From: Blepharisma stoltei ATCC 30299
Lineage: Eukaryota > Protista > Ciliophora
Direction of reading: 5' to 3'
Assembly (NCBI GenBank): GCA_965603825.1
Contig: CBFDEM010000043.1
Location: forward strand, 124,001-188,000
Length of the DNA: 64,000 bases
Part shown: positions 4,234 through 22,531 of the stretch, piece after piece
Numbering within the stretch: the first letter of the stretch is position 1
Layout of the letters: each line of letters opens with the position of its first letter
Notes under the pieces: model-generated
What the model was told of the DNA's origin: nothing
Database searches by the model: none
The model's input: the letters and a program-made list of their open reading frames with translations, nothing else
Made by a program: the position numbers and the translations under genes

Positions 4234-6213
4234 TTATTCATCTTTGGCGCTCATAAAAATATTTAAAGTTCCTAATGACTCTAGTCTTTCTAATAATTTC
4301 GCGCCATCATATTTCTCATGGAAAATCAGCTCAAATTTATTTTCTGGCAAATGATCCTGTAGAGTTCCCACTTGGGCTTTTTTGCTTATATGATGAGGCT
4401 CAGGGAACAAAGGGTCTAAAGCAATTTTAAAAGCATTTTCAAGCATTGCTGGTATAATCCTCGCTAAAATAGGAGACGAAAGCTCAAGACAAGGATTAGT
4501 ATTGACTTCTAAAAGCCAAGGCTTCAAATTAGAATCCAATAGAAAATCATACCCATATATTTCAAAAGTATGAGCCCTATTATTTTTGCTTATTTTCATA
4601 TAAACAGCTTGTATTGTATCTTTAACTATATCTTTCATAGCAGGGAGTACATCGTCAAAAAAGTTAATATTTACTTTTGGCCTTCTGTTTTCTATATACC
4701 TCTGAAACTCCATATACGAAATTTTATTTCCATTCTCAAATTTCCCATAGTCCTCTGACTTTTTCTGCACAGCGTCATTTGTTAAATGGATAAATTTATT
4801 ATCAAGATTTTTGGGTGAGTATTCTTTACACGCAGTTCTTAAATATCCTTCTTGGTAAAAATAAGCTTGAATAATTCCATTAGTAGCTGTAACAAGCGTA
4901 TACAAGCGAATATCAAATTTTCGCTTATTGATTAAATAAGGCCTATCTAAATATTTTTGAATAATAAAAGTATGCTCACCTGTCTTAGGAAATGGGTTAT
5001 TTCTGACCTCTTGGGTAATTTTTTCTAAAGTATCGCACACACATATTCCATTTCCTCTATTTGTATTTTCTCCTGGCTTTAAAATCCACAGATTTTGCTG
5101 TTTTGAGGATTTTAACTCTTGGAAATAGTTTAAAAACTCGATAAATTCTGGGTCTTCTTCTCCAAATTTTATATGAAAAGTAAGCGGCAAATAATTAAAA
5201 ACATTTTTTCTTAAGGCGCTATAATACTTTTTCATGTTCATATATAAAAATTTTTTATCTGATAAATTTGAGTTGAATTCTAGCCTGTTGTGGCATTTTA
5301 TCTGATGAGGAATGTATTGGAGTTTTTCACTTAAAACGACATATGAGCTACTTTTAGTAATAATATCATACCCTAATGGGGAAATATCTACACTTTTTTC
5401 TTCAAGGACTTCAGACTCGTAAAAAATTTTACAATCTATTGACCTTTTTTCAATATTCTCTATATTTTCTGGCCTGTCTCTTATAATTGGGATAGAATTA
5501 ATAAATTCTTGACTTTTCAACTGTGTCCAAGACATATTTACCCCTGGACTTTGCTCTTCTTCAGCTTGTGACCACCATCATCTGCTATTAAAACATTGCT
5601 TTACAAGCGGATGATTGTTTCCTTTTCCTAAAAAATATTTATACAGCCCTCCATTGCTTTCGTTATGAGTAATAATAATTCCATTACTTGCGTTTATAAA
5701 GGATGACAACTCAGATTGTATGAATTCTTTGGCCTTGCCGAGCCACGATTTATCTCTCATAGCTTCTTTTAAAGAGACCATCCCATTTTTCTGGATCCTA
5801 AAAGCAGACAAATCAATTTCAAAATGTTTAGGAATCACTGTGGTCCTATAAGTAAAATTTTCGTCGTTTGCTCCCGTTTTTCTATTGATAAGGATAGGGG
5901 AGTCGATGTTTTCTGTAATAATTCGTCTACCTTTGAAAATACTGATTTTACTATAAATTCTTGGATTCCTATGGGTTTGCTTCTCTGCGACTTTTGGGGA
6001 GTAAATACTTTTAACTGCATTTATAATTTCTTTATCATCTAAATTGGTGTGGCCTTCTGGAGATTGGCTTAATTTAGGTTTCGTGTTTGGTAAGCTTCCT
6101 TTCGTTATTTCAGTTTTATTGTTAAGTTTGCTTAATTGTTTCCTTTGAGGAACAGATGGAATTTTTGGCCGATCTTTTACATGCTGACTTTGAACAGACT
6201 TACGAATTGACAT
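4234..6213 (-). CDS. Tubulin-tyrosine-ligase-like (TTLL) enzyme, probably glycylase-type
   Basis: Motifs WILKPG..NRGNGI, IIQKY..PYLI..RKFDIR, HLTNDAVQK, FEIYGYDF, WLLEVNTNP. TGA 5578-5580 read as W gives GNN..LVK...RWWW...WTQ. Start 6213 (or 6243) is uncertain. Confidence 0.9.
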
Positions 6214-6486
6214 GAAATCACTAATTATAAAACGAAAAGACATTGAGAACCATTTTAGTCGGTTTTTTAATTGCGGCAAGAAGAAGTTAGTTAAGAGTTT
6301 ATGTAAGAAAATAAGATTAAGTTATTTTATAACTGCTTAAGAGAAAAAATAAATTCACTAATAGCATTATAATTTAAAAAAATTTATCTAAATATATATT
6401 AAAAATTAAAAAAATTGATAAAGTATCTAAATATTATAATTAAATTAAGAAATTTAAAACAAATTTTAATATAATTTATTCATATT

Positions 6487-9400
6487 TTATCGATATGTTA
6501 GTTCATCTAATGCTCTCCTAAGCCTGTCATTATCTCTTTGCAGAAGCTCATACTGCATAAAGAGCGATCTATATTTTTTGTCTGCTTCATCCATAAGATG
6601 GATTTCTTTTTCCATATCTTTTCGAAGTGTTTCATTAGCCTCATTAACCCTTTTCAGTTTTTGTTCTAAATCTCTATTAATATCTTCTCTCAGCCTCAAT
6701 TCTTTGACTTCTTCTTCTAAGTTTGTGACTTTCATTGTCAAGACTTTTTCATTCTTAGCTCTTTCTTCTTCTTTTGGAGTGGCCATCATAGTTCTTTTCA
6801 GCAGGTCATTTTCTGCTCTTAGCTTGTCAATCACATTTCTTAAAGAATCTATTACTTGTTCAAGCTCTTTTGTTGACCTTGTCGGTCCTTCCATAAATGT
6901 TGATCTCACTTCTGCTTCTCCAACATCTGCAAACTTTACCGTCTGTGGCTCTTCATCTTTTACCTTCAGCCCTTCTTTAATAACTGCATTCTTGAACTGC
7001 TCCAATTCTTTTATCCTTCTCTGCAGTCTTGCCAACTGCAAACTAAGCGTCTCTTTTTCGAATTTCATGTCCAAATTTTCCGCCTCAACTTCCAGCAGCT
7101 TTTCAGCTTCTTCAAGCTCTTTTTTCGAAATTTCCTCCAAGACCTCTTCAAGTCTTTTTACCTTCATATTAAGCTCATAGACCTCATCTTCCCTGAGCCC
7201 TTCTACACTTTTTATTTTCCCTGCTCTTAATTTCTCCAATTGTGACTGTAAACTCATATTTTCTACTTTAAAATGTTTATTTTCTTCATGCAAAATATGG
7301 TTATCATGCTGCAGCTTTTTGCATTCACTTTGAATGGTTACTTGGATTCGCTTTTGTAGAGCCATATTTTGCTGCTGGAGCTCAAAAAGTTCTTTTCGCA
7401 TTGCTTCCATTTCAGAAATTTGGCTAAAAGTGACTGGTTCTTGGATTTTTTCTGCTGGAATTTCGATGCGTTTAGAAATTTCTTGTTTTTCTTGTTCGAG
7501 CTTGCGGGTGAGGCCTTCAAAATGAGCGATTTGTTTTTCTTTGGTTTCGAGCTCAGCTTTTAGCATGCTGATTTGCTTGTTCAGCATTTCGAATTTTCGT
7601 TCATCGCGTTGGGATTCTAAAGAAGCCTGGGGTCTTGTGTCGTTTGCTTTTTTACTTTCTATTTCGGATGGTCTTACAGATTTGATAGGGCTTGCAATTA
7701 CATTTTTTATAGCTTTGTCAAGCTTTTTAATTGCAATTCCTGGTTCTTCACCTCCTTCTCTTGTTTTCATAGCAGCTGCTGCAAACTGCTGTGAAAACTG
7801 TATCAATAAATTTGTCTCTTCTTCACTCAGCCCTACTCTTTTGTCATTTAAATTCCTTCTGAACACCCCTACCGCTATCTTTTTCAGTCCATCAGCTAGC
7901 ATTTCTAAAGTCATTCTCTTATTATTGAGCATATTCCCAAACCTCCTTATAAAATTCTCCATTGCTGGCTCAATCTCGATCGGTTTTGCTTTGGTATTTA
8001 ATTTTTCTAGCTGATTCGCCATTTTATTTTTTTCTTTTTCCAAATTTGCTATAGTCTCTCTTAGCTGTTTTATATCTGCTGTCTGATTGGCCGTATACCT
8101 ACTGGGGGCCTCTTGCACCCTTACTGGCTGTTCTTTATGTTCCTCTATTCTTTTTTTCAGCTCATTATTTTCTTTCATAAGCTTATTCAGCATTTCTTGT
8201 TTTTTCATCTGGTTGTCCACAATTCTCTTGTTTTCTTCTTTTGCTTTGGTTTCTCGCTCTGCGACTTCTATTTTTTCTGTTTTCAGACGGTTTATTTCTT
8301 CTCTGGCTTCTTTCATTTGTTTGGTCAAAGTTTCGATCCTTTGTTGGGCTTTCGCCATGTTTTGGGCTATGACTGAGTTGTCAGAGTTTTCTCTGAGGGC
8401 TTTTTCGCGTAGGTCTTTTTCTTTGACTTCGTTGGTTTCTGCAGCTTTTAAGAGGTCGTCTTTGAGCTCAGCTAAACTTTTTTTGAGTCCTTGAAGTTCT
8501 TTGTCTTTAATTTGCAGCTGCTTTTTGGCGAGCTCAAGCTCTTTTTTGTAGCCTTCTCCAGTGTTTTTAGCTTTTTCTATATTTAGTTCATATTTGGTGT
8601 CTTCTAGTTCTTTTCTAAGCTGGTTTAGAAGCCTTTCATTTTGCTCTTTTATTTTTTCTGCCCCTTTAAGCTGCCCAATCAGATAGTTCAAGCGGGAATC
8701 CCTGTCTTGAAGCAATACATCAAGATCTGGCCTATAGCTGCTTGACGGTCTTGACCTTATATTAGACGCATTAATGGCTCCTTGTAAGTTTGCCATAGCC
8801 CCTGTTGTCCTAGTCTGCAGCTCTTCAGCCAGTCTATGGGCTTCTCTTACTGACTCTTGTTGAGCCCTTACAAGGTCTTGTTGCAATTTTTGTATTTGTG
8901 CTTCTTTTCTCTCCAACTGTGCATTTTTATTATCAATCATTTCATTCAGTGTCTTTATAGTCGCATTTGCCGCTTGTGCTAGTTGGTCAGCTTCATTTTC
9001 CCCTGTAATTTTTATTAATTCTTCTCTTGAAAATATTGTCCTGCTCTCCTGAGTCAGCCCAGTTCCTGCTCTTTCTGCTTCATTTCTTACAGCAGTTAAA
9101 TGGTTTATTTGTTCATTTCTGATTTTTATCGTATTTTCTGCGATCCTCAGCTGTTCTTTTAGTGTAGCAATATCGTCATCTTTTTTCTTTACCTCCCCAG
9201 GTGTGATTTTTGGCTGAAAACCATCAGAAGTGTGGATCTGGAACTTGGGGTTCAGCAGCATTTTTTGTCGTTCGTCGTCTTTTTTGCGTCACGCTTCTTC
9301 TTTTTTGGCTAAAACTGACTCCCATCTTGCTACTTCTTGTTCCAAAGTCCTTATATTGTCCATATCTTGAACGTGGATTCTTGCATAGTATTCTTCTTTT

Positions 9401-12400
9401 TCTTTACTATGGCCCATTTCACGCTTAGCTTTAAGCTCATTGAGCCTCAATTGGCTCATTCTTTCAGCCATCTCTACAAGTCGGTCAGAAATATCGTCAG
9501 AGCTGCCTGTTTTTATAAGCTGGTATATTTCTTCAGCTGCGTTTTTCATGATTTTGGCTTCTTCTGACTTGCTTTCTAGGTCTAAAAGTTCGCCTCGGAG
9601 CCTTCGGGTTTCGTCTTCTAGCTCACTTTTCTTTTCCCCGAGGTCTCTGATTTGAGAAATAAACTCATTTGCCTTATCGAGGCTTATGTTGTGCTCAGAT
9701 TTTAGCTTGAGTTCGCGGATTTGGGACTCATAATTGGCAATTTTTTCAGTCAGGACTTGTTGGAGGTCGTAAATTCCTTTTTCTTTTTCCATGGTTTCGT
9801 TTTCAAGACGGAAAGCTTCAGCTCGAAGGTTCCTGGCTTCGTTTAGAAGACTGTCGTATTTTCTATTTGCGGAGGCTTCTGACCAGCGGGAGACCATCAC
9901 TTGGTGATAAAGTTTTCCGACTGTGGCGGCTTCAGCGTTATCAGCTTGCATCTCTCTTATAGCTCTTTGGAAAGTGTCGATTTCGTCTTTTCGCTTTTCA
10001 ATGCTCAGCTGTAAAGCTCGGACGTGGTCTGCAGATACTTGTACTAATGATTTATAAGTGTTCATAGCTGCTCTTGCTTCTGCTAGTTCTTTTTGCAAAA
10101 TTTCATTATTTTGTTTTAATTGTTCAGCTTCAGCTTTGCTGACAGTATTAGCTAGCCTATGCTTATTAGTGGCGTCTTCTTCTCTCATGATGTGGTATTT
10201 CTTAGTCAGGTCTATATTTTTGGCTTCTAATATTTCTATATGCTTTTCTGCTTCACTTAAAGAAGTTTCTAGGTTTTTCATCCTTACTTGGTATCTTTCT
10301 ACTTTATTCTGTGCAGCTTGTTCTCTAGCTTCATATAGGGCAACTAGTCTTCTATCTCCTCTTCCACCTCCATATGAATATTCTGGGTCATTTCTGACCG
10401 CTTCTTCAGCTTCTCTAATTAGTATTTGAGAATCCCTTTCCTTTGTGCTGCTCTTAAACTGTGTAATAAATTCTGCTACACTGATATAGCCATCTCTATC
10501 ACTATTCATAGAGTTCCACAGCTCATCCAGCTGTTCTCTTGTTAGCCCTGCATTCATCCTCGCAAAGGTCTGGTTGAATTCTCCTCTATTGATTCTCCCA
10601 TCATGATTTGTATCAAATGCAGAAAAAGCTTGATATAAGTCCATTCCTACCTTTCTTAATGTGTCATTAATTCTGGCTATAAGCTCATCTTTCCAGTCTG
10701 CTGACATTGCTTTTTTCTCTTGAGGCTTAAGCTCTAATTCTCTTTCAAAAACTTTGGAAAACTCGGAAAATTCGATTAGACCGTCTTTGTTTGTGTCAAT
10801 TAATTTCATTACTTTTTCGATTTGGTTGACTGTTAAGCCTAAATCGAAATTAGTAAAAGAATCCAAAAGCTCTTTTCTAGTAATTTGCCCATCTCCATCT
10901 CTATCAAAAATACAGAATACATCATAAAGTGTATAGTTCAGCTTCTTCACAGCTTGATATATCACTTGGATTATTTGCTGCTCCTCAGTCATCGACTGCA
11001 CCCCATATATTTTCATTTTTCTAATAAATTCAGTATATTTTACAGTGTTATCTAAATCCACATCAATAGACCTCAGCACAGCCGTTACCTCAGCTGGCAT
11101 CAGTTTTATTCCAATATTTTCCAAGGCAGACCTAAACTCGTCCTTTGTGATTTTTCCATCTTTATTTTTATCAAAAAGGTTAAAAGCAGTTTCTGGGCTT
11201 ATGAATTTTGATTTAAGATGGCTGACCACACGTCGAAGTACAGCCTGCTCAAGGCGAAAAGAAGGATCATAAGACTCAAGGCGGCGGGAAACCATATCAA
11301 GCTCAGCGTCCATATCGATTTTTAAGTCATCATAATTTCTGATTTTTTCATGAAGCTGGATATTTTCACGTTCCATATTTTCATACTTAGAAAGCCGCTT
11401 ATAAAGGTCTGCTTCTTTTACAATAGAATCTGCTAATTTTTCTTGAGCTATATCAAGCTGATGTTCTATAGCTTCATATCTGTCTATTTGTACAGATTGC
11501 CTAAGCTGTTTAAACAAAAACTGCAGCTGATAAGTAGCAGAAACCCTCCACTCTTTAAGTCTTCCTATTTTCTTCTGTACCAGTACATCTTTTTCAGCAT
11601 GTTCTGACTCAAATGAATGATAAGCCATCCTCAAATCTTTTTCTTCACTTTGTAAACAGTCATATTTTCTTGCCAATCTCAAATTATTTACTTCTAGCAG
11701 TGCAATTCTGGTCGCATATTCTGCAACTTTTGCCCTCTCAGAGCCAACACTGTTATCTTGTATAGTTTTTGCCATATCTTCATAAACCCCTACCTGTGCT
11801 CTGGCTTCTCTGAGTTCTTGTAAAGCTGTTTCATACTGATTTTGTAGATGGTTTCTGTCTTCTTTCCACCTTAAGTTTTCTATAGAATATTGTTTATAGA
11901 GCTCTTCTTGGACTAGTAAAATTTCTCTTAATTTATTTCTGAATTCTTCTAACTCGATTGCAGTGAGTTTGTCGTCTTCGTCTCTTCTTGAAATCATTTC
12001 TAACAGCTCTACAATTTGAAGCTGTAAAGCTGATAGGTCTCTTTTAGGCTCGCCAGTCCAGATTTCAGCGACTGGGAGTTTTCCGCCGAATCTGTAGGAG
12101 TAGCCTTCATGGAATTCTCCCATAGGGTCTGGAATTGGGACAGGTGGTAGCTGCAATATATGTCGAGAAATGGTGGCTCTTTCTTCAGTAGTAGGGGTCA
12201 TCCCTGAAAAAAGTTTCATTAAAAGGTCTTTAAGCTCTTTGTTTTCAAGGCGAATTTGTTCTAAAATCTGCTCAGAAAGGCCGTTATCAGTAGATTTGGT
12301 CCCAAACGAATGAGATTCCAGTATCTGCAACTGTGCTTTTAGCCTCTCAATTTCATTTAAAAGCTCTTTAGATCTATCATTTAGCGGCAGTTCTACCCTC

Positions 12401-13182
12401 CCTTCCCTTAAATTATTCGCAAATTCATCGACCATCCTCATTTGTTCAGCAGTCAATTGGTGGAACCTTAAGCCTTTTTCTCCATAAAGTGTCGATAAAT
12501 TCCTCAATTTATACCTCAAATCCACCCTTTCTTTTTCTAATTCTTCGACTTCTTCTTCAAGCCTCCTTATCCTTCCTTTATATTCTTCAATTTTTTGCTT
12601 TTCTGCAAGCTTGATTTCTTGTAAATTAAACCCATAATTTTCAGGCACCCCCGTCATTTCTCTAAGCACTCGATTTTCTGACATGATGTCTTGCATTTGG
12701 TTACTTAAAAGTGTTCAATCCTTAGTCAGTTTTTCTACTTCTCGCTTCAAGGCTAAATTGTCCTTTTTTTCGCCGCGGATGTCTTTGAAAGCGTCAGTGT
12801 TGCCTTGGCTTTCGGCGACTTCTTTAAGTTTGCTGGTTAAGAATTCAATTTCGTTTTCTTTGTCTTTAAGCAGTTTTTGGTCTATTTGCAGACGGTCGTT
12901 TTCACGCCGGAGTTCTTCATTTTTAGCTGTGACTTCGTCAATTAGTTTGCGGAATTTTTCTTTTTCGAGGACAGCAGCTTTTTGAGCACGGTCGTCAACT
13001 ATTTTGTCGAAGTTTACGAGAGTTGTGTGGGCTTGGCGGTTCTCGTCTTCGAATTTTCTGTTGGAGTGCTCGAGCTCGATGATGCGCTCGTCGCGGATTT
13101 TGAGTTCTTGCTCGAGCTTGACGATTTGGCGACGGCGGAACTCGAGCTCTTTCTTTAGGTCCATGATCTCTTTTTGGGACAT
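6487..13182 (-). CDS. CEP290: CEP290 homologue (~2231 aa) with an internal six-EF-hand insertion
   Basis: Three ORFs fuse in frame across TGA 12715 and 9289. CEP290-like blocks: ENRVLREMTGV, EVEELEKERVDLR, RIALLEVNNLRLARKY, VGKLYHQVMVSRWSEA, AANATIKTLNEMI. TGA 9289 sits at the W of the human 'AWDQRE' equivalent. Confidence 0.85.
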
Positions 13183-13486
13183 TTTGAATTGTAAGAAATG
13201 AAAATTAATTGAATTTAGGCCATAAGTGGATGATGAATTGTGGGATTTCGGAAGGCAGGAATGATTATTATTTTTGATTATTTTTAGATGTGCAATAATG
13301 CTTAAGTAGAGAGACTTACTGAACTTCATATTTAAATTTGTGAATTTACTACAAAAAGATTAAATTATTTATCAGAATAATTAATTATTTAATCTAAATA
13401 TATAGAACTGTTTTGCGTTAATTGCTAAAATTTTTAGAGATTTGTGATTATTTTAAGAGGATTTAGGTTCATTTGCAGTTCTAAAA

Positions 13487-13918
13487 ATGGTGAAGCACAA
13501 CAACGTGGTTCCCAATGCTCACTTTCACAAGGACTGGCAATCTTATGTAAAGACCTGGTTCAATCAACCAGCTCGCAAACAACGCCGACGCAAAGCAAGA
13601 AGCTTAAAGCTGGCAAGATCAGCACCAACTCCTCTCAAAACTTTAAGGCCAATAGTTCATGGTCAAACATTGAGATATTCAGCCAAAGAAAAGCAAGGAA
13701 GAGGATTTTCTCTTGAAGAACTCAAGAAAGCTGGCCTTACCGCACAATTTGCCAGAACGATTGGAATAAAGGTTGACCACAGACGAAGAAACAAGAGTGC
13801 AGAAACCTTACAAAAGAATGTACAAAGACTTGAACTTTTTAAGTCAAAGCTCACTCTTTACCCACTCAAGGCAGGAAAACCAAAGAAAGGCTTAGTTAAT
13901 GACGCAGTCAGTGCATAA
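13487..13918 (+). CDS. RPL13: 60S ribosomal protein eL13, C-terminally short (143 aa)
   Basis: [42 protein letters not shown] motifs. Confidence 0.95.
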
Positions 13919-19471: not shown

Positions 19472-22400
19472 ATGTCTTTTCCTCAAATGTAAAATTCATA
19501 TAGGAAACCTGACCCAAAATCTCCTGCATCCCACTATGATGAAGAAATCAGCAAAGAAAGCGACGAACATCTATTTGAGAAAAAAGTCTACAGGCAGTCT
19601 AGCAACCGCCCACATAGTGCAAAAGCAGCTGATTTCCAAATTTCTAAAACATCAAATCGTAAAACCGGCCGCCCTATTTCAGCTCATAAGCAGGCTCAAG
19701 TTAGCAGGTTAAGAGGGAAAACCAAGCGAGACTCGGACGTGACCTTTTTGGCAAGGCTAAGACCAAGGGGGATTCCTATGGACAAAGAAAGATTGTATGA
19801 AGATAACATGGCGTTGAAACTTAAAATGAATATGATCAATGAAGAAATGGTCAAATTAAGGACAAAGCTGAACCAATATGAGAGGGAAATCATCAAAAGA
19901 GACGATTTAATTGAAGAATTAAGAAACCCAGCAGAAAAAATCCCAGGGCAAAACATAAAACAGACCCATCTCGTCGCGAATTTGAAACAGAGCATAAAAG
20001 AGCTGAGAATGGATTTACAAGCTAAAGATGAAGAAATAAACAAATTGAAAAAAAATATAAAATCGACAAGATCAAGCGAAATGGAGATAGAAATCCAAGC
20101 TTACATCGATGAATGTACAAGACTAAGGCATCATCTTGAAGAAGTTATGAGACAACGTGATAGCCCAAGAAGCTCTCAAGGTTTTGCTAACGCAGAAGAT
20201 AGAAATTATCAGCAAGAAGTGCAAATGAATAATCTCCACAATGAAAATCAGCAGCTTACCAAAGTATTGGCAGAGGTACAAGAAGAAGCTTCAAGATGGA
20301 AAGAAAAAGCGCTTGAAAATGAAAAAAATAAGAAAAATGCAGCTCCGAAAAAAGGGGAAGCGAATAACTTGAAAAATGAAATACAAAAACTTAAGGCACA
20401 ACTGGATGCTGGGCAGAAAAATTTAGCTGTAAAAGAAGCGGATTTAAAAATGATTTCAGAAAAATCGAAAAAAGAAGCCCAGGATCTTGTTAGTAAACTT
20501 GAAATGTCAGAAGAAAAAATAAGGGAGCAAAATTTGTTGATAGAGCAGCTGAGAAATCAGTTGTCTGGGCAAGGAAAAGCAGAGAATTCGAAACAAAATA
20601 AGATGGAAGAGTCAAAAGTTCAGCCTAAAAAGAGTAAATTGAAAAATCCAAATAAATTTTTGAAAAAAATCCATTCAATTTTAGCTAAAAAGAAAATTGA
20701 TATCGAAACATTTTCACGGCTAATTGACAAAAAAATGACCGGAACTATTGATATTGATGACTTTGTTTCAGAAACAAAAAAAATTGGTAAAAAAATAAAG
20801 AAAAAACATGTGGAGCAAGCTTTAAAAGAAATTTCTGACAAAGGAAAAATCCATTTAGGTAAGTTAATCCAGTACTATGAAAATTACGAATTTGAGGACA
20901 AAAATTCAAGCTCTTCGTCAAGTGATGAAGAAGTAGAAAAACAAAACAACAAAGAAAACCAAAAACAAGCTAATCAGCCATTCCCTGATAAAATTGATAT
21001 TGAAGTCCCAGCCGCATCCCAAGCAGCTCCCCCCAAACAAAAACAAGAAGTAAAACCTCAGCCTAAAGACTCCAAACCTGTAGAACCAAAAATAAAAACA
21101 GTAAAACCAAACCAATTATCTGACACTTTTAAACACATATCTCTCCGTATGCAACTTCATAGACTTCCCAAGCAAAGCTTGATGCTTGCCCTCTTTGAGT
21201 CTCTCCCTAACAAAGAAAAACCAATCACAAAACCTGAATTATCAGTCCTTTTTGAAAGACCTCCTTTTAGTCTCACCGATAAAGCCGAAATAGACTTAAT
21301 ATCTAGGTTCTTATTAGAACCCGACGACCCAGAAATTTCACAAAGCCAAGCTAATATCTTAAAAAGCACTCCCAAAGAAATAGTCGCAAAATTAGGGAAA
21401 AACCTAGAAGACTGGGACATTTTTACTACAGAGGACGAAGAAGATTACGATAAACAGCTGGCTCTTGCCATAAACAAAAATAAAGTTACATTAAAAGAAG
21501 CTTGCAAACTATATGACGATAAAGAAACCGGCGTGATTAAGCTGAGTCAGTTTAAAGACGCCCTAAAGCAAGCTGACATACTGTTTCCTTCAAAATTATT
21601 TGCTTATATGAGCTTATTGTTTTATTCTCACAATTATGAGCTTGACTCAGTTCCTTATCGGCATTTTTTGAAAGCATATGGGTCACCAATGGACGGAGAA
21701 GAAGAGTATGAAGAAGACGAAGACATTTCTGATGAAGAAAGGGCAAAGGTGGTAAGGCATTATCTGGGAGTAATGGCACAAATTATGATAAAACTGAAGA
21801 AAACAGTAAAAGAAGTATTTAAATTTGATAAAAATGGGCTGATATCCCCAGATAACTTTATTGAAGGTCTTCAAACCTTAGGAATGAATAATATTGAACA
21901 AGACCATGTAGTATTGATATTAGAAGCTTTACAATATGAAGAATCAGAAAACGACGTCTGCATTAGTGCAGATGAACTCGAAGAAATTTTAGTTCACTAC
22001 GGAGTCCCTGCGCTCAGAGATTCAGAAAGAGATCAGTCCAGCAGCAGGCGGTCAAAAACCTCTTCAGAGTCCTCCACAGGGCATATTAAAAAAGTATCCC
22101 TCTTAGAGTCCCCAGAAAACTATGAATACAGTGAAGACTCCCCAGAAAAAGCCAACAAAAACTCAGTCGGAATCAGTGAAAGCTCCCCATTTGCCAGCTT
22201 ATCTGGTGCAGAAATAAACAAAAACCCTTCTGGCAAAAGTCTCCCTAAAAATAAAAAAAGTGAAGAAAATTCCCCAAATTTCAAGCCAAGTGACAAACCA
22301 GGTAATAAAATTGGAAAAATTTCGAATTTAGCACAAAATTTAGAAAAGGAAGAGGAAGAAGAATATGAGAGCGACTATGCAGAAGATTATGAAGAGCAAG

Positions 22401-22531
22401 GATCGCAGGACTCAAGTATTGTATATAAGAGTTCTGAAGAAGAAATGGGAGCAAAATCAGCTGGGGAGGTAAATGAAAGTTATGGGAGTGAATATGAAGA
22501 AGAGCAGTCAGGATCGTCTGTAGATGTATAA
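19472..22531 (+). CDS. IQCE-like coiled-coil protein with degenerate C-terminal EF-hands and an acidic tail (one 15-nt intron)
   Basis: ATG 19472 plus the intron 19489..19503 extends ORF 19739..22531. 'KERLYEDN..LK..LRTKL..EREIIKRDDLIEEL...LVANLKQSI...KNIKST...EME.E..AY.DE..RL' resembles the IQCE N-terminal coiled coil. EF-like loops DKKMTGTIDIDD, DDKETGVIKLSQ, DKNGLISPDN. Confidence 0.7.
19489..19503 (+). other. 15-nt spliceosomal intron
   Basis: gtaaaattcatatag; creates an in-frame TAA if retained. Confidence 0.8.

What the first reader, a model, noticed from the sequence alone, without database searches (positions are those of the whole stretch)
10455..11205. CEP290 carries an inserted array of six EF-hands: candidate Ca2+-sensing transition-zone scaffold
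Seen: three EF-hand pairs lie in frame between CEP290-like coiled-coil blocks, with loops DKNKDGKITKDE, DVDLDNTVKYTE, DRDGDGQITRKE, DTNKDGLIEFSE, DTNHDGRINRGE and NSDRDGYISVAE. Most keep D/N at positions 1/3/5, G at 6 and E at 12. No stop or intergenic-like DNA flanks them. Established: animal CEP290 is an almost pure coiled-coil transition-zone protein, and ciliary reversal and deciliation in ciliates are Ca2+-controlled. Inference: the ciliary gate scaffold could sense Ca2+ directly. I do not know of a description of this architecture but cannot exclude one.
Basis: partly seen in the sequence, partly recalled or inferred. Interest (0 to 1): 0.8.

Follow-up and report, generated by a model that had tools for sequence, protein, structure and literature searches.

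The report
Alveolate CEP290 with built-in EF-hand insert
The main scaffold protein of the gate at the base of cilia (CEP290) carries, in ciliates and their alveolate relatives but in no other eukaryote sampled, an ancient inserted block of six calcium-binding motifs, so the gate may respond to calcium directly; this has not been tested.

Summary
Observation confirmed. Window 13182..6487 (minus strand) is one intronless gene (TGA read as Trp, heterotrich-type ciliate) for a 2231-aa protein, single-copy in the genome. Both flanks match animal CEP290 colinearly (hhalign 99.8% and 99.6%), an animal CEP290 profile hits only this locus, and one RNA-like contig spans both junctions. The insert is about 275 aa: three units of a lead helix plus an EF-hand pair. 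It is not peculiar to this species. All 40 ciliate-clade orthologues retrieved carry it at the same site, as do Chromera and Hematodinium (degenerate); 26 non-alveolate orthologues lack it. Ca2+ ligands are kept in heterotrichs, Protocruzia, Ichthyophthirius and one further clade, and largely lost in two others. I found no paper describing it, but EF-hands on other transition-zone proteins (NPHP1, NPHP4, RPGRIP1L) are published. In Paramecium the RPGRIP1L EF-hands are dispensable for deciliation, and CEP290-depleted cells still deciliate when Ca2+ is forced in. So Ca2+ binding is likely, a modulating role plausible, and an essential trigger role unlikely. Paramecium and Tetrahymena sequences were not retrieved. 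The scan earlier noted an EF-hand/NPHP1 giant elsewhere in this genome, not this gene.

The parts
6487..13182 (-). CEP290 orthologue, intronless CDS, 2231 aa plus TAA (P0028)
   Evidence: single copy in genome; start at 13182 matches orthologue N-termini and RNA-like coverage ends near 13160
11221..13182 (-). N-terminal CEP290 flank (aa 1-654); lacks roughly 240-340 residues present at the N-terminus of myzozoan and animal CEP290
   Evidence: hhalign to animal profile 99.8%, E 2.6e-29; reciprocal hit at 12196-12804; offsets
10984..11265 (-). Insert unit 1: lead helix + EF1 (11172-11137) + EF2 (11064-11029; N at position 6)
10705..10986 (-). Insert unit 2: lead helix + EF3 (10905-10870) + EF4 (10797-10762)
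10438..10701 (-). Insert unit 3: lead helix + EF5 (10614-10579) + EF6 (10506-10471)
   Evidence: best Pfam full-domain match EF-hand_11, E 4e-13
6490..10437 (-). C-terminal CEP290 coiled-coil flank (aa 916-2231)
   Evidence: hhalign of its first ~400 aa to animal profile 99.6%, E 1.4e-23; BLAST
9316..9648 (-). Pfam CEP209_CC5 (PF16574) match
   Evidence: 25.1 bits against a cut-off of 25, E 2.1e-5; coordinates
12715..12717 (-). In-frame TGA read as Trp
   Evidence: W at this column in orthologue consensus; inside an RNA-like contig
9289..9291 (-). In-frame TGA read as Trp
   Evidence: W in orthologue consensus

Best explanation
This is the genome's one CEP290. In the alveolate ancestor a tandem of three 'lead helix + EF-hand pair' units was inserted at a short linker between two coiled-coil segments (shown by sequence). 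By orthology it is a transition-zone scaffold lying along the doublet microtubules (inferred from Paramecium). In heterotrichs and several other free-living ciliates the loops bind Ca2+ (inferred from kept ligands). The most likely role is modulating: ciliary Ca2+ rises load the insert and change its stiffness or its grip on microtubules or partner proteins, tuning the gate or its strength, redundantly with the EF arrays of RPGRIP1L and NPHP1, without being the essential trigger for severing (inference).
For: Colinear profile matches and reciprocal hit. Gap between flank anchors 285-365 aa in most ciliates, 212 and 465 in the two myzozoans, -5 to 33 aa in 25 of 26 non-alveolates. Flank-only tree groups insert carriers (local support 0.992). 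Full ligand sets in 32/36 heterotrich, 6/6 Protocruzia, 4/6 Ichthyophthirius and 31/48 C4A3-clade loops against 8/42 and 14/54 in two other clades: the fold survives without ligands, so keeping them points to selection for metal binding. Best structural neighbour is the spectraplakin ACF7 EF1-EF2-GAR (Z 13.6). Paramecium CEP290 lies at the transition zone near the microtubules and NPHP5/IQCB1, the calmodulin-binding partner, is reported absent.
Against: No binding or localisation data for this protein. Ligands are lost in whole ciliated lineages, so Ca2+ binding is not needed for a working cilium. Many top structural matches are microtubule inner proteins, which suggests a static role. The one tested parallel (RPGRIP1L EF-hands) gave no deciliation phenotype. 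The lead helix could fill the pocket that sensors open; not tested.
Confidence: 0.45

Rival explanations
1. The insert is a structural module: a microtubule-binding or spacing element like the EF repeats of EFCAB6, CFAP115 and Rib72/EFHC, permanently loaded with Ca2+ or Mg2+ or metal-free, with no switching role.
For: Best PDB sequence matches are EFCAB6 (E 3e-32) and CFAP115; top Foldseek hits are doublet and central-pair proteins; VIA-align ranks 2, 3, 5-9 are doublet proteins. Fold and length are kept where ligands are lost. RPGRIP1L without EF-hands rescues deciliation.
Against: Complete ligand sets kept across deeply separated ciliate lineages, in a lineage-specific pattern of loops. Structural resemblance among EF pairs is generic.
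Confidence: 0.4
2. The insert is the essential Ca2+ sensor that triggers deciliation or ciliary reversal in ciliates (the strong form of the first reader's idea).
For: CEP290 depletion blocks Ca2+/ethanol deciliation in Paramecium (PMC7093003); six canonical loops here; it would explain why removing the RPGRIP1L EF-hands had no effect.
Against: The same depleted cells deciliate with dibucaine or after permeabilisation, which the authors read as a Ca2+-influx defect (knock-down was partial). Clades with mostly dead loops remain ciliated; non-alveolates shed cilia without the insert (own knowledge).
Confidence: 0.1
3. Artefact or non-orthologue: misassembly, two adjacent genes, or an unrelated coiled-coil EF-hand protein.
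For: Coiled coils match promiscuously; the Pfam CEP290 score only just reaches the cut-off.
Against: One 3873-nt contig from an RNA-like run covers 9271-13143 with no joints; same architecture in 41 other orthologues; colinear profile matches and unique reciprocal hit; GC3 alike in insert and flanks.
Confidence: 0.02

Closest known systems
CEP290/NPHP6 (animals, other eukaryotes; Paramecium PTET.51.1.G0130345)
   Same: Colinear coiled-coil regions on both sides of the insert, PF16574 region, similar length, single copy; the Paramecium primer in PMC7093003 encodes a start in register with the ciliate N-termini seen here.
   Different: About 275-aa EF-hand insert near animal residues 1020-1095; ciliate proteins lack about 330 N-terminal residues; listed as coiled coil only in PMC3495828.
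Paramecium RPGRIP1L with C-terminal EF-hands; protist NPHP1 and NPHP4 with EF-hands (PMC7093003, PMC3495828)
   Same: Lineage-limited EF-hand gain by a transition-zone scaffold, already proposed to respond to Ca2+; this genome's RPGRIP1L carries the same kind of ~95-aa unit.
   Different: Those are terminal additions; here the block splits the CEP290 rod and is shared from ciliates to myzozoans.
EFCAB6/DJBP, CFAP115, Rib72/EFHC EF domains (microtubule inner proteins)
   Same: Lead helix + EF-pair repeat; best sequence and fold matches.
   Different: Not orthologous; no other domains shared; loops here are canonical.
Spectraplakin (ACF7/MACF1) EF1-EF2-GAR; ninein-like proteins
   Same: EF pair packed on a preceding helix at the end of a rod (Z 13.6, rmsd 2.5, 85 aligned); centrosomal coiled coil with EF-hands (weak Atlas leads).
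   Different: No GAR domain or spectrin repeats; three units in mid-rod. An analogy for mechanism only.

Membership tests
CEP290 | Colinear homology to CEP290 beyond generic coiled coil, on both sides of the insert | tested here: met
   hhalign 99.8% and 99.6% in the right order; named CEP290 proteins fill the hit list
CEP290 | Reciprocal best match in the genome | tested here: met
   Animal-type profile without EF-hands hits only this locus, E 1.2e-14; single copy
CEP290 | Pfam PF16574 region at the curated cut-off | tested here: met
   25.1 bits against 25, marginal; also recorded for P0006, P0007, P0298
CEP290 | Placement among CEP290 orthologues on a flank-only tree | tested here: met
   Ciliates 0.999, alveolates 0.992 local support (FastTree); no paralogue outgroup was included
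CEP290 | N-terminal ~330-430 residues of animal CEP290 (typical, not universal) | tested here: not met
   Ciliate proteins start ~100 aa before an anchor at residue ~340-450 elsewhere; no separate gene found. The localised Paramecium CEP290 appears to start the same way, so this is a ciliate trait, not grounds for exclusion
CEP290 | Transition-zone localisation and gate function | not testable with these tools
   Shown for Paramecium CEP290 in PMC7093003, not for this protein
Canonical Ca2+-binding EF-hand pair | Ligands at loop positions 1, 3, 5, 12, hydrophobic 8, Gly 6, in paired helix-loop-helix | tested here: met
   6/6 loops have the ligands, 5/6 have Gly 6; three pairs in both AlphaFold models
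Ca2+ sensor (calmodulin-like) | Ca2+ binding in the signalling range with a conformational change that alters a partner contact | not testable with these tools
   Needs ITC, NMR or binding assays
EFCAB6 / Rib72-EFHC microtubule inner proteins | Orthology over the whole protein or the accompanying domains | tested here: not met
   Only the EF repeat is shared; not filed as a member

The most novel reading that the evidence does not exclude
Alveolate CEP290 is itself a Ca2+ switch in the ciliary gate: an in-chain calmodulin-like hinge that stands in for the missing NPHP5-calmodulin link and, with the EF arrays of RPGRIP1L and NPHP1, lets the transition zone change permeability or breaking strength within a Ca2+ spike.
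Probability: 0.2. Interest if true: 0.8.

Novelty: new variant of a known kind. Interest (0 to 1): 0.55.

Why it matters
CEP290 is a major ciliopathy protein treated as a pure coiled coil. An ancient insert shows that the rod tolerates ~275 residues at one linker and can do without its animal N-terminus. It gives a defined, testable candidate for how Ca2+ acts at the site of ciliary shedding, where the sensor is unknown, and a possible reason why deleting the RPGRIP1L EF-hands had no effect (redundancy). It is also a shared derived character of alveolates, and it explains why these orthologues sit in databases as anonymous 'EF-hand domain-containing protein' (Ichthyophthirius IMG5_119470, Chromera Cvel_3555).

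Tried and rejected
Misassembly or gene fusion: rejected. Species-specific novelty: rejected. Separate gene for the missing N-terminus: only weak coiled-coil hits, E >= 0.03. A dinoflagellate CEP290 without the insert (P0038, labelled Durusdinium): intronless on a 9.2-kb, 61% GC contig and nested among non-alveolate sequences, so probably a contaminant and not counted as alveolate. Paramecium, Tetrahymena and TAA/TAG-recoding spirotrich orthologues: not retrieved by three word searches, the representative search (top 150 of 675), an Atlas look-up or two metagenome scans; this is a limit of the searches, not absence. A direct profile comparison of the animal alignment with the insert-centred alignment was uninformative (15%). 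One locus search failed for lack of conserved columns. NPHP5 presence in this genome was not tested (no sequence with a reference). The costly representative search was run once because the distribution claim rests on absence.

Full report
The gene. The six loops lie in one minus-strand frame of an ORF from 13182 to 6487. With the standard code it breaks at two TGA codons (12717, 9291); with TGA as Trp it is continuous, as are neighbouring genes. The product is 2231 aa and is in the protein collection as P0028. TGA = Trp, a 41.5-Mb assembly in 64 contigs and close relatives with the same layout point to a Blepharisma-type heterotrich ciliate (inference from my own knowledge; the source is not named). 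It is single-copy. Neighbours are ordinary: a TTL-family gene downstream, eL13, a C92 peptidase and tRNase Z upstream.

The observation. The strict EF-loop pattern occurs six times in the insert, never elsewhere in the protein, and at most twice in 2000 shuffles. Pfam finds three pairs. All loops have the ligands at 1, 3, 5 and 12; loop 2 lacks Gly 6. Two AlphaFold models (mean pLDDT 77.6 with alignment, 66.0 without) show three units of about 93 residues, each a lead helix followed by an EF pair, between long helices; pTM is low, so the arrangement of the units is unknown.

One transcript. Three runs that the tool only guesses to be RNA behave as RNA: no depth in the intergenic bin 13174-13372 and about 100-fold more on eL13. 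In one, a single 3873-nt contig covers 9271-13143, both junctions included, with no joints or indels. These are short-read contigs, not long reads.

The flanks are CEP290. An alignment of 12 insert-free, animal-type CEP290 sequences hits only this locus in the genome (E 1.2e-14). Profile comparison gives 99.8% for the N-flank and 99.6% for the C-flank, in order, leaving Nematostella residues ~1021-1095 between them. PF16574 scores just over its cut-off. Ciliate proteins begin about 100 residues before an anchor that lies at ~340-350 in myzozoans and ~440 in animals, so about 330 residues of the animal N-terminus are missing; no separate gene for them was found.

Distribution. All 40 ciliate-clade orthologues long enough to judge carry the insert at the same site. 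Named ones are Protocruzia adherens and Ichthyophthirius multifiliis IMG5_119470. The rest are metagenomic; I label them heterotrich-like, armophorean-like (C4A4 telomeres, standard code), litostome-like and a C4A3-telomere clade (probably phyllopharyngean) from the tree and from telomere repeats, the link between repeat and lineage being from memory. Chromera velia Cvel_3555 has an expanded insert that aligns in register (97.2%, E 3.7e-11), and Hematodinium (TSA GEMP01, identified from PMC6642578) has units 1 and 2 without unit 3. The gap between flank anchors is -5 to 33 aa in 25 of 26 non-alveolate orthologues and an overlap in the last. A tree from the flanks alone separates ciliates (0.999) and alveolates (0.992) from the rest (FastTree local supports). 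A single gain on the alveolate stem is the simplest reading, though only two myzozoans were sampled. Paramecium and Tetrahymena were not retrieved.

Ligand conservation. Complete loops: heterotrichs 32/36, Protocruzia 6/6, Ichthyophthirius 4/6, C4A3 clade 31/48 (several misses are only Asp for Glu at 12, or Thr at 3), armophorean-like 8/42, litostome-like 14/54, myzozoans 1/12. The fold persists without ligands, so their retention elsewhere argues for selection on metal binding; their loss shows that binding is not needed for a ciliate cilium. Related sequences are not independent, so these counts are descriptive.

Mechanism. The unit resembles the EF repeats of microtubule inner proteins (EFCAB6, CFAP115, and unnamed doublet chains) and the spectraplakin EF1-EF2-GAR module (Z 13.6). 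Paramecium CEP290 sits near the transition-zone microtubules, and NPHP5/IQCB1 is reported absent there (PMC8535419, PMC7093003). I favour a Ca2+-modulated scaffold (0.45) narrowly over a static structural module (0.40). An essential trigger is unlikely (0.10): CEP290-depleted Paramecium deciliate when Ca2+ is forced in, and RPGRIP1L without its EF-hands rescues deciliation. Shown here: gene, orthology, insert, distribution, ligand pattern. Inferred: localisation, Ca2+ binding, any switching.

What is known. PMC3495828 reports EF-hands on NPHP1 and NPHP4 in some eukaryotes, suggests a Ca2+ response, and lists CEP290 as coiled coil only. PMC7093003 reports them on Paramecium RPGRIP1L. This genome's RPGRIP1L has at least nine loops in similar units, and an earlier unchecked scan note describes an NPHP1 with about 40. 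Five searches found no paper on EF-hands in CEP290; the library lacks most subscription papers, and databases already record the EF-hands without the CEP290 name.

Verdict. Real, ancient and apparently undescribed for CEP290, but a further case of a published theme, with the one tested parallel negative. New variant of a known kind; interest 0.55.

Noticed in passing
L019:1327-7518 (G000:C56): RPGRIP1L-type gene (PF11618) with at least nine EF loops in ~95-aa units after the C2 region; two other PF11618 genes (C14, C33) show no EF loops in the ORFs scanned.
   Followed up: partly
P0139:1780-2203 and P0156:2617-3052: Protocruzia and Hematodinium CEP290 have a second, C-terminal EF-hand array; faint traces at similar places in P0012, P0033, P0034, P0145, P0149, P0154, none in this window's protein. 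The ancestor may have had two arrays.
   Followed up: partly
L009 (GCA_963969995.1, CAXAMM010000928.1): The CEP290 labelled Durusdinium trenchii is intronless on a 9.2-kb, 61% GC contig and groups with non-alveolate sequences; probably a contaminant.
   Followed up: partly
P0149 (MCQ2815713.1): A ciliate-clade CEP290 with the insert is deposited as an archaeal MAG protein; likely mis-binned.
   Followed up: no
window 13490-13918 (+): eL13 ORF is 142 aa and covers only positions 1-130 of the 180-position Pfam model; RNA-like contigs end near 13904, consistent with a short, highly expressed form.
   Followed up: partly
window 4237-6321 (-): A tubulin-tyrosine-ligase-family gene lies directly downstream on the same strand; adjacency not examined in relatives.
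   Followed up: no
window 19493-22528 (+): 1012-aa ORF with weak EF-hand matches, otherwise unassigned.
   Followed up: no
window 8644-8710 and 9211-9270: Clusters of minor-allele differences in RNA-like contigs but not in the DNA run laid; probably strain or allele differences.
   Followed up: no
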